Shown here in pieces: positions 41,697 to 44,600 of a stretch of DNA of 64,000 nt (positions are counted from its first letter, which is position 1; every line of letters begins with the position of its first letter). The DNA is from Octopus bimaculoides (Eukaryota). The stretch spans positions 2,210,345 through 2,274,344 of the forward strand of contig NC_068999.1 of NCBI RefSeq assembly GCF_001194135.2, written 5' to 3'. The translations under genes were made by a program, and so were the position numbers. Below the pieces are notes generated by a model, which saw nothing but the letters and a program-made list of their open reading frames with translations, ran no database searches and was not told the DNA's origin.

Positions 41697-44600
41697 TTCA
41701 ATAATATTACCACTGCTGCTGTTGCTTCTGCTACTACCACCACCACCACCACCACCGTCCATATACAGCTGTGATAAAATGTAATGTATTCAGTGACACA
41801 GTAACATTTAATAAGAAACCTCCCACCCATCCACCTACCCTACCCTTCCCTCAACATGCCACTCACCCCCTTTACTCTGGGTGGGGGTCAACGGAATGTC
41901 AGATGACAGATATGTTAATCTGTCNNNNNNNNNNNNNNNNNNNNNNNNNNNNNNNNNNNNNNNNNNNNNNGAGGGGGGAGGTGGAACTGTATAAAATTGG
42001 TGCATGCAACATTTCGGCAGAGAGAGGAACTGGAACTGGGAAGCTGTCTTAGGCAAGACGCACCACTCTGCCAGTCACATGGCCAGTGAGATACCTTAAA
42101 TAAGATACACAACTCTACCAGTCCCCCAAGCAGCTAACAGTCACACAACAACATATTTCAGACCAAGGCACACGCCTCCACCAATCCCATACGTCTCTTT
42201 GTGTTCTGAGACTCAAACACAATTTCAGTCGCTCCACTGATTTATTTTGCTATGAAGGACCAAGGAGAATCACATCAAATGCTTCAACTAGAAAAACATA
42301 TACAAAAACACATTGAAAAACACAGACACACACTTGTACACACTGGCTGATTTTGACTTTCATCCCCCTCAGGGTCAATACAATAAGTACTATTTGAGCA
42401 CTGGGGTTGATGTAATTAACCAGCCCCAAGGCCTCCAAAATTTCAGCCTTTAGAAAGGATTATTATTATCATTGTTATTATTATTGAGCAAGAGAGAGCA
42501 GTGGATGCCACCAAAGGGACACTAGGATACAAATATACAAAGCCAACCCATCGTGACCACACGTCTGATAAGGGTACACCAGGCACATGCATCACAACCA
42601 TGTCTGTGCACAACATGGCGACCTCATATCAAGATGAACAGTGCATGGCAAAGCTTCTTACTACACAAAGGCATTTGAACTCAGAATGTAAAGACGGATA
42701 AAATGCCACTCAAGCATTTCGTCCAGCCAACCAACAACCCCACCGGCTTGCTGCCTTAATAACAATGATGATCATGATGACAATGACGATGATGATGATA
42801 GTAATAATAATAAAGGTAATGCGAACAAGAGATACGTGAGAGGTACATTGTTTGCTGTAAACCCATAGAAATAAAACCAAAACAGTTGAAATATTACGTC
42901 TCTGACGCCAAAACTCTCATTTTTCTCATTAGTTTTTATTGGGATGTTTTTCTTGCTTTTTTTTTTCTAATTGCCTAATATGGTTTTGGCTCTTGTTGTT
43001 GTTGTTATTGCTGTCATGATGCTGTTGTTGTCATCAACGCGTTTTTCCCAGCAAATAACCAAACCAATTTATTTATGAGTTTTTTTTGTTTTTTGTTTTT
43101 TGCTGTTTATTTATTTATTTATTTTTTTTTTTTGTTGCTTTGTTTCAATATTGTATTATCGAATAAAAGGAGGCATAGACATGGACCTGTGGTTAAGCAG
43201 ACTAATTTCAACACTGTGCTGTTTCAGGTTCCGGCCCACCACACAGCACCATTGACCTACCTTAGCACTAAGAGGGACCAAAGACTTTCTAGTTAAATAT
43301 GGCAGCTATAAAGGGTGGTGGAGGTGGTGGTGGGGGCGGGGGGAGAGCAGGACCCTATCAAATATTATGCTCTACCTATTCATGGCTCCCAGACTAAATT
43401 TATCACATTTGTTAACCGCAACCACAACCAACAACAACAACAACAACAACAACAGCACAATCACATGTATATCTTTAGTGCTTGCAATGTTAAGGGCTTC
43501 CTGGAGAGGCATGAAAGCCTCTGCATCTCTTTCACCCTCCATTTCTACATTCCCAGACTTCTTCACACAAACTTGTGACTTACAACATATCTCATTTATC
43601 ATGCCAACGAGTCACTAACGAGCCACTAACGAGCCATTTAATATTCAGCGAACTGCATGGACATTTGCACCATCTGTCACTCACACACACACACATGCAT
43701 GCATACACACACGCATATGCAAAACTGTACAATCCCCTATACAGACAGACACAGAAGCACAAATACATAGACAAACACACATTAACACACACGTATATAC
43801 ACCACATGCAGCTATACACATACAAACACACAAAGTAACACAGATACATACACAAATATAGGCATGCACACACACATAGACAATCAAATGCGTATACACA
43901 CTGAAAATACAGAAACACGCACACACACATACACATGCATGCACATACATTTATATGCATTTACACACATGAAAAGTGCACACATATACACACACATGCA
44001 GAAACACACAAACAGATGCACACAGGCATGTTTGGTAAGCCTGAAGAATGCATGGTATGGATGGAACCGTTAGCCGACAGACTGGCTGGAATTAAAAGGG
44101 CAATGAAGGACCCTTGACACTGGATAGAATGAGAAGGGGTTTGTGTGGGGGGGGCGCTGGGAGAGGGGAGGCAGAGGAGGAGGAGGAGGAGGGGACAAGA
44201 GGATAGAGCCAGAGGAAAAGGAGGAGGGGACAAGAGGAGGATTGAAGCAGAAGTGGTCAGTTGTTGTAAAGACCAATGTGATGGACATTTCATCTATCCT
44301 TTACTTGCTTCAGCCATTAGACTGTGGCCATGCTGGGGCACCACCAGGAAGAATTCTCAGTCAAATGAACCAATCTCTGCTCTTGCTTTTGTTTTCTTTC
44401 CAAAGCCCTGTACTTATTCTATCAGTCTCTTTTACCAAACCACTAAGTTACGGGGATGTAAACACACCAACATCAGCTATCAAGCAATGGTGGGGGACAC
44501 ACAAACACATACATACATATATACAACAGGCTTCTTTCAGTTTCCGTCTACCAAATCTGCTCAGAAGGTTTTGGTCAGCCTGAGGCTATAGAACCATGTG

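What the first reader, a model, noticed from the sequence alone, without database searches (positions are those of the whole stretch)
42221..42330. Out-of-order duplicate of the METTL4 catalytic (DPPW) exon, turned into an in-frame stop exon
Seen: 42287-42221 aligns gap-free to exon C (53/67 nt) and keeps the 67-nt length, an acceptor (tttttctag) and a GT donor. It also shares about 40 nt of upstream intron. The changes destroy the catalytic motif: GAT CCT CCA TGG (DPPW) becomes GGT CCT TCA TAG (GPS-stop). The copy sits upstream of exon B, inside the phase-1 intron A-B, so splicing from exon A reads in frame (..SHTN-V-EAFDVILLGPS*) and truncates the protein before the methyltransferase domain. 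The copy keeps FDVI, like vertebrate FDVIVIDPPW, whereas the live exon has FHVI, so both copies have diverged since duplication. Inference: either a relic of an intragenic tandem duplication, or an exapted poison/decoy exon that could tune METTL4 levels through NMD.
Basis: partly seen in the sequence, partly recalled or inferred. Interest (0 to 1): 0.72.

Follow-up and report, generated by a model that had tools for sequence, protein, structure and literature searches.

The report
Dead duplicate of a METTL4 exon
A 115-base stretch inside an intron of the METTL4 methyltransferase gene is a real but decayed copy of the gene's catalytic-motif exon, and the RNA data on hand show it being skipped, so it looks like an ordinary duplication relic, not a regulatory "poison" exon.

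Summary
On the minus strand, 42287-42221 matches the live METTL4 exon C (37281-37215) at 53/67 without gaps; shuffled controls reach at most 37/67. Homology runs about 46 nt into the upstream intron and at most about 10 nt past the exon, roughly 115 nt in all. DPPW has become GPS-stop. Spliced after exon A, the copy reads in frame to TAG, before the MT-A70 domain. Independent DNA runs contain the copy at single-copy depth, so it is not an assembly artefact.

The poison-exon reading is not supported:
- mRNA contigs from four RNA runs in two studies join exon A directly to exon B.
- Where RNA covers the copy, it is collinear with the genome across both putative splice sites, and it comes from intron-rich libraries.
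- Thirteen other RNA runs hold none of the copy's sampled 31-mers.
- All six real donors of the gene have G at +5. The copy's donor is gtgttt, apparently GTGAGT split by a 4-nt insertion.
- Differences spread 6:5:3 over codon positions, and 8 of 9 amino-acid changes fall on the copy, as expected for neutral decay.

Best reading: an inert pseudogenic exon. Low-level NMD-masked inclusion and conservation in other species could not be tested.

The parts
42221..42287 (-). Pseudogenic copy (C') of METTL4 exon C. It is 67 nt long and 53/67 identical to the parent. The DPPW codons now read GPS-stop.
42288..42333 (-). Duplicated upstream intron segment. It includes the polypyrimidine tract and the AG acceptor (tttttctag), and runs into a TG-rich tract at its far end.
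42211..42220 (-). Degenerate donor region, gtgtttgagt. The parent has gtgagt. The copy looks like the parent donor split by a 4-nt insertion and lacks +4A and +5G.
42250..42252 (-). In-frame TAG, derived from the TGG (Trp) codon of DPPW by a single G>A change.
37215..37281 (-). Live parent exon C, encoding GGPFHVILIDPPWQNKSVKRLK (start of the MT-A70 domain). Its flanks are tttttccag and gtgagt.
37282..37326 (-). Parent's upstream intron segment, homologous to 42288-42333.
37625..37786 (-). Exon B (162 nt, phase 1 on both sides). RNA contigs join it directly to exon A and to exon C.
49336..49558 (-). Exon A (223 nt, ends in phase 1). Its donor is joined to exon B in assembled transcripts.
42345..42420 (-). 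Fragment of a highly abundant interspersed repeat (SINE-like) lying just upstream of the duplicated patch. It is not part of the duplication and marks where homology is lost.

Best explanation
The feature is a pseudogenic exon. A patch of about 115 nt, made of METTL4 exon C, about 46 nt of its upstream intron and its donor, was copied in the same orientation into the preceding 11.5-kb intron, about 5 kb upstream. It has since drifted neutrally. It lost the catalytic DPPW motif, gained a stop codon and lost a usable 5' splice site. It is transcribed only as part of the intron and is removed with it; the mRNA goes exon A to exon B to exon C. It has no effect on METTL4 output. Shown directly: the homology, its extent, the disabling changes, single-copy presence in independent DNA runs, the A-B junction, and unspliced RNA over the copy. 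Inferred: neutrality, lack of function and the duplication mechanism. The mechanism may be a short templated insertion or a microhomology-mediated event at the TG tract, or the last surviving piece of a larger duplication.
For: Homology is significant and short. Nothing else in the intron matches the exon B/C region except repeats, and there is no copy of exon B. The 14 exon differences fall 6:5:3 on codon positions with 7 transitions and 7 transversions. Against ten METTL4 homologues, 8 of 9 amino-acid differences map to the copy lineage and 1 (D>H) to the live exon. All six real donors of this gene have G at +5 and T at +6; the copy has gtgttt. mRNA contigs of 1757 nt (X9 depth 26.8, X29 66.4, X34 77.4) and 2493 nt (X31 73.9) join A to B to C directly; a 1141-nt X41 contig (depth 22) shows the B-C join but begins inside exon B. 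The only laid RNA contigs covering the copy are collinear with the genome across both putative splice sites: X29, 471 nt, 42006-42420, depth 14.1, and X41, 158 nt, 42186-43343 corrected to 42186-42343, depth 2.2. Runs of the X29 study (P12) hold about 26% of the words of a neighbouring 3.6-kb intron stretch, against about 1% in other RNA runs, so this is generic pre-mRNA signal. Thirteen other RNA runs of the same organism hold 0 of 8 sampled copy words, while fourteen hold the true exons. Three raw RNA runs gave 0 reads on the copy. An independent DNA run has a 288-nt contig identical to 42124-42345 at depth 62, similar to the 49-60 of neighbouring single-copy contigs. DNA-type runs from three studies (P11, P13, P14) hold its words.
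Against: The acceptor is intact, with a good polypyrimidine tract. The 67-nt length and reading frame are kept, and the stop is in frame, which is the anatomy a poison exon would have. RNA depth is limited: the raw runs were about 6% sampled and gave only about 3-5 reads on the true exons. Assembled contigs drop rare isoforms, and NMD would deplete inclusion products. No orthologous intron from another species could be obtained, so selection on AG, GT or TAG is untested. A cryptic donor with +5G (GAC|gtatgg, GT at 42192-42191) lies 28 nt downstream and could substitute for the broken one.
Confidence: 0.85

Rival explanations
1. Poison exon. The copy is occasionally spliced between exons A and B. 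Its in-frame TAG ends translation before the MT-A70 domain, the transcript is degraded by NMD, and this tunes METTL4 levels.
For: The acceptor and polypyrimidine tract are intact and the frame from exon A is preserved. The stop lies several junctions upstream of the last exon. Sampling of raw RNA reads was thin.
Against: No junction or spliced contig was found in any run. A-B is assembled directly in four runs. RNA over the copy is collinear. Thirteen RNA runs hold 0 of 8 copy words. The donor gtgttt lacks the +5G present in all six real donors. The substitution pattern is neutral, and retaining AG and GT at 79% per-site identity is unremarkable (about 0.4 by chance). No literature precedent for a METTL4 poison exon was found.
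Confidence: 0.05
2. Decoy exon. The copy's strong acceptor recruits U2AF/U2 without productive splicing. It engages the exon A donor, slows removal of the 11.5-kb intron (intron detention) and lowers METTL4 mRNA output.
For: There is a strong acceptor next to a weak donor. Intronic RNA over the copy reaches about a fifth of mRNA depth in X29, 14.1 against 66.4. Decoy exons are a described mechanism in large introns (PMC6097662, PMC7373989).
Against: The same libraries carry intronic words elsewhere in this intron, so the signal looks like ordinary pre-mRNA from intron-rich libraries. Published decoys need functional splice sites on both sides (PMC7373989 abstract), and here the donor is degraded. 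No comparison with other introns was possible.
Confidence: 0.04
3. Assembly artefact. The copy is a mis-assembled or chimeric piece of this gap-rich draft and does not exist in the genome.
For: The window has 24 N-gaps, one only about 250 nt from the copy (41925-41970).
Against: A contig from an independent DNA run is identical to 42124-42345. DNA-type runs from three studies hold all or most of its words. RNA contigs of 471 and 158 nt reproduce it with its flanks. 21% divergence from the parent rules out a collapsed or duplicated read pile.
Confidence: 0.01

Closest known systems
Pseudogenic exons (decaying duplicated exons within their parent gene; DeLima Morais & Harrison 2009, PMC2718932)
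   Same: It is a duplicated exon lying in an intron of its own gene, disabled by a premature stop, with a neutral substitution pattern and no place in the main transcript. That paper reports such exons in 0.4-1.0% of mammalian genes.
   Different: The copy sits out of order, two positions upstream of its parent, not adjacent to it. Only about 115 nt survive.
Poison (NMD-triggering) cassette exons
   Same: It is an intronic segment flanked by AG and GT with an in-frame stop upstream of later exon junctions. If included, it would truncate the protein and should trigger NMD.
   Different: Inclusion was not detected. The donor is weak. Conservation, the hallmark of well-studied poison exons, could not be shown. 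Its origin is a duplicate of a coding exon.
Decoy exons that promote intron retention (Parra et al. 2018, PMC6097662; PMC7373989)
   Same: It is a cryptic, non-included exon-like element deep in a large intron (over 1 kb) with a good acceptor.
   Different: Known decoys depend on functional splice sites on both sides and are linked to measured retention of the host intron. Neither is shown here.
Tandem exon duplication giving mutually exclusive exons (e.g. PMC6071210, PMC12772994)
   Same: It arose by intragenic duplication of a single exon with a little flanking intron, and the length and phase are preserved.
   Different: The copy is not adjacent to its parent, is separated from it by exon B, carries a stop and has lost the catalytic motif. 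It cannot serve as an alternative coding exon.

Membership tests
Pseudogenic exon (duplication relic) | Statistically significant homology to an exon of the same gene | tested here: met
   53/67 ungapped against at most 37/67 in 200 shuffles; blastn E=4e-23 over 116 columns.
Pseudogenic exon (duplication relic) | Lies within the parent gene's own intron, on the same strand | tested here: met
   It lies in intron A-B (49335-37787) on the minus strand. The exon boundaries are confirmed by spliced contigs.
Pseudogenic exon (duplication relic) | Coding disablement (premature stop or frameshift) | tested here: met
   TGG>TAG at 42252-42250, and DPPW>GPS*.
Pseudogenic exon (duplication relic) | Substitution pattern without coding constraint | tested here: met
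   Differences fall 6:5:3 on codon positions. 8 of 9 amino-acid changes are on the copy lineage when polarised with ten homologues. Numbers are small.
Pseudogenic exon (duplication relic) | Absent from the mature mRNA | tested here: met
   A-B is joined directly in four RNA runs. The copy is seen only in collinear contigs. 0 of 8 words in 13 RNA runs. The detection limit is perhaps a few percent.
Poison exon | Functional 3' and 5' splice sites | tested here: inconclusive
   The acceptor tttttctag is good. The donor ATT|gtgttt lacks -1G, +4A and +5G, whereas all six real donors have +5G. No quantitative splice-site model was available.
Poison exon | Junction reads showing inclusion | tested here: not met
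   No joints or loose ends at 42287 or 42221 in three raw RNA runs and four contig sets. Depth was low and NMD was not inhibited.
Poison exon | In-frame stop upstream of later exon-exon junctions | tested here: met
   The stop comes 12 codons into the copy. Exons B to F and a last exon follow.
Poison exon | Conservation of splice sites and stop in related species | not testable with these tools
   No cephalopod loci were retrievable. Read laying negatives for other species are uninformative, because the positive controls X30 and X35 also failed. Organism D holds 2 of 15 words near the copy but 0 of 8 inside it.
Decoy exon | Elevated retention of the host intron that depends on the element | not testable with these tools
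   Intronic RNA is present in P12 libraries, but no comparison with other introns or any perturbation was possible.
METTL4 / MT-A70 methyltransferase (host gene) | MT-A70 domain with a DPPW catalytic motif | tested here: met
   Pfam PF05063 E=3.2e-38, covering the full profile. DPPW is in live exon C. Best PDB match is 7cv6. The copy itself fails this test (GPS*).

The most novel reading that the evidence does not exclude
The decayed exon copy has been exapted as a regulatory element of METTL4. It could act as a rarely included NMD-triggering exon, using the cryptic donor at 42192 or the weak gtgttt. It could instead act as a splicing decoy whose intact acceptor delays removal of the 11.5-kb intron. 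Either way a methyltransferase gene would be controlled by a dead copy of its own catalytic exon.
Probability: 0.06. Interest if true: 0.5.

Novelty: new member of a known kind. Interest (0 to 1): 0.15.

Why it matters
As an inert pseudoexon it matters mainly for annotation. Gene predictors and homology-based exon finders could wrongly place it in a METTL4 model and produce a truncated protein, or a model with two DPPW-like exons. It also dates a small intragenic duplication and shows that the live exon changed the conserved Asp to His after the duplication. If it were a working poison or decoy exon, it would be a neat case of a gene regulated by a relic of its own catalytic exon. Nothing here points that way.

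Tried and rejected
Short stretches were used instead.

2. Raw RNA runs X21-23 gave 0 reads on the copy, but only about 3-5 reads on the true exons. This is a weak negative.

3. Cross-species presence: contigs of organisms B and C (X17, X18) did not lay on the copy. Two organism-A runs that the word index says hold it (X30, X35) also failed to lay. The negative is therefore uninformative.

4. Orthologous loci through protein search failed. The N-terminal query found nothing. The C-terminal query found METTL4 from many animals but nothing closer than 54% identity, so there was no cephalopod locus to fetch.

5. Looking up the exact protein was not possible. The exon upstream of A (ending ...EIQAKEYHEK) is not in the window, so the full protein cannot be built.

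6. A search for a matching copy of exon B, or any wider homology, found only repeats. The 566-nt gap at 45499-46064 remains unread.

7. An intronic polyadenylation reading (AATAAA created in the copy at 42246-42241) was rejected. The X29 RNA contig runs more than 230 nt past it.

8. Rfam and tRNA scans of the window found nothing.

Full report
**1. The observation**

The minus strand at 42287-42221 reads TTGAAGCATTTGATGTGATTCTCCTTGGTCCTTCATAGCAAAATAAATCAGTGGAGCGACTGAAATT. It is preceded by ...tgtatatgtttttctag and followed by gtgtttgagt.

An ungapped scan of both strands of the window finds one other place with at least 40/67 matches: 37281-37215 (minus), at 53/67. Two hundred shuffles of the live exon gave best matches averaging 34 and never above 37.

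Sensitive blastn of the exon B/C neighbourhood against the rest of intron A-B gives 37212-37326 against 42218-42333 as its best hit (116 columns, 78.4% identity, E=4e-23). Every other hit is an interspersed repeat or a microsatellite. The duplicated patch is therefore about 115 nt: the whole exon, about 46 nt of upstream intron ending in a TG-rich tract, and the first few bases of the downstream intron.

A gapped alignment suggests the parent donor G|TGAGT survives in the copy as G-TGTT-TGAGT, that is, split by a 4-nt insertion. No copy of exon B exists in the assembled intron.

**2. The host gene**

Splicing the minus-strand exons gives an open frame:
- A: 49558-49336
- B: 37786-37625
- C: 37281-37215
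- D: 32521-32347
- E: 22870-22663
- F: 22099-22008
- a last exon near 10075

All have AG/GT borders.

The product matches Pfam MT-A70 over the whole profile (E=3.2e-38). Among solved structures it is closest to Arabidopsis METTL4, 7cv6 (E=1.4e-39). Database homologues are annotated METTL4. The MT-A70 match starts in exon C, which carries DPPW.

Exon A ends in phase 1 and exon B is 162 nt long, so introns A-B and B-C are both phase 1.

Nine of ten METTL4 homologues have [FY]-D-[LVF]-[IV] before DPPW; Ciona has Asn. The copy's Asp is therefore ancestral, and the live exon's His (CAT, 37270-37268) arose after the duplication.

I did not verify the species, because run and organism names are coded. 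The nearest retrievable proteins are only 54% identical.

**3. Is it real DNA?**

Yes.
- Nine runs hold all 15 sampled 31-mers of 42160-42335, and eight more hold 60%. Among them are DNA-type runs of three studies (P11, P13, P14).
- One DNA run has a 288-nt contig identical to 42124-42345 at depth 62. Neighbouring single-copy contigs are at 49-60.

It is a single-copy feature of the genome, not an artefact of this gap-rich draft. The recurrent 60% share, and a C>T at 42235 in one run, point to ordinary polymorphism.

**4. Is it spliced?**

*The canonical mRNA skips it.*
- The 1757-nt transcript contig of run X9 (depth 26.8) lays on exon C, exon B and exon A at consecutive record positions. Its overhang at 49336 is the start of exon B.
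- Runs X29, X31 and X34 have contigs of 1757-2493 nt (depth 66-77) in which exon B is flanked by exon A and exon C sequence. X41 shows the B-C join.

*RNA over the copy is unspliced.*
- In X29 a 471-nt contig (depth 14.1) is collinear with 42006-42420. In X41 a 158-nt contig (depth 2.2) is collinear with 42186-42343. Both run straight through the putative acceptor and donor.
- Libraries of X29's study (P12) also hold about 26% of the sampled words of a neighbouring 3.6-kb intron stretch, against about 1% in other RNA runs. This is generic pre-mRNA signal, not something special to the copy.

*Other runs.*
- Thirteen other RNA runs of the organism hold 0 of 8 sampled words of 42195-42300. Fourteen hold the real exons.
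- Three raw-read RNA runs gave no read on the copy. They gave only about 3-5 reads on the real exons, so that negative is weak.

*Limits.* Contigs drop rare isoforms and no NMD-inhibited data exist. Inclusion at a few percent or less cannot be excluded.

**5. Sequence-level signs of decay**

- The six real donors of this gene (gtcggt, gtgagt, gtgagt, gtctgt, gtcagt, gtttgt) all have G at +5 and T at +6. The copy has ATT|gtgttt, with no -1G, +4A or +5G. From general knowledge of U1 pairing this is a very poor 5' splice site.
- A cryptic GAC|gtatgg lies 28 nt downstream, with its GT at 42192-42191.
- The 14 exon differences fall 6:5:3 on codon positions, with 7 transitions and 7 transversions. 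Polarised by outgroups, 8 of 9 amino-acid differences are on the copy lineage.
- The Jukes-Cantor distance is 0.245, so the duplication is old.
- At 79% per-site identity, keeping both AG and GT has a chance probability of about 0.4. One stop among 22 drifting codons is unremarkable. Nothing in the anatomy requires selection.

**6. Mechanism and comparison with known kinds**

The best explanation is a pseudogenic exon: a short intragenic duplication, now inert and removed with the intron. Such decaying exon copies are a described class, found in 0.4-1.0% of mammalian genes (PMC2718932).

How the patch got there is inferred only. It could be a short templated insertion or a microhomology-mediated event at the TG tract. 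It could also be the last recognisable piece of a larger duplication later overwritten by repeat insertions; different SINE-like fragments abut the parent and the copy.

The poison-exon and decoy-exon readings (PMC6097662, PMC7373989) share the anatomy. They fail, or could not be put to, their defining tests: junction reads, functional sites on both sides, host-intron retention and conservation. No paper links METTL4 to a poison exon of this kind, or describes this duplication.

**7. Verdict**

It is a new member of a known kind and of low interest. Its main value is as an annotation caveat and a small evolutionary marker.

Noticed in passing
window 37268-37270 (minus strand, exon C): The live METTL4 exon has His (CAT) where nine of ten homologues, and the dead copy, have Asp in the [FY]-D-[LV]-[IV]-x-x-DPPW strand. 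This is a lineage-specific change at a conserved position next to the catalytic motif, and it arose after the duplication.
   Followed up: partly
window 42241-42246 (minus strand, inside the copy): A C>T change turned the parent's AACAAA into a canonical AATAAA poly(A) signal just after the TAG. The X29 RNA contig runs more than 230 nt past it, so there is no sign that it is used.
   Followed up: partly
window 42345-42420; also 37390-37550 and 44500-44840: These are fragments of very abundant interspersed repeats (SINE-like). Contig depth reaches 10^4-10^5 in RNA runs of organisms A and D. Different fragments abut the copy and the parent exon. ARAGORN and Rfam do not recognise them.
   Followed up: partly
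upstream of window 49558 (not found in the window): The mRNA contig joins exon A to an upstream exon ending ...GAAATTCAGGCGAAAGAATATCACGAGAAA (EIQAKEYHEK). That sequence is absent from the window, so the exon lies in an N-gap (for example 53020-53967) or beyond 64000.
   Followed up: partly
window 38301-41920 and 42006-42420: RNA libraries of one study (P12: X29-31, X34, X53, X54) carry substantial intronic METTL4 signal. They hold about 26% of intron words, and depth over the copy is 14 against 66 for the mRNA. Other RNA studies hold about 1%. This is probably total or nuclear RNA. Whether intron A-B is preferentially retained was not tested.
   Followed up: partly
window 42160-42335: Eight runs of organism A (RNA and DNA) hold exactly 60% of the sampled words, and one RNA contig has C>T at 42235. 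There appears to be a common variant haplotype over the copy region.
   Followed up: no
window 41975-42345 (tool behaviour): read laying placed no contig of X30 or X35 on the copy, although the word index says both hold 60-100% of its words. Negative read-laying results on contig sets are therefore unreliable here.
   Followed up: yes
whole window: There are 24 N-gaps (10-992 nt, 5214 N in all) and very frequent TG/TA and other microsatellites. This is a fragmented short-read draft assembly, and the METTL4 gene spans more than 40 kb of it on the minus strand.
   Followed up: no
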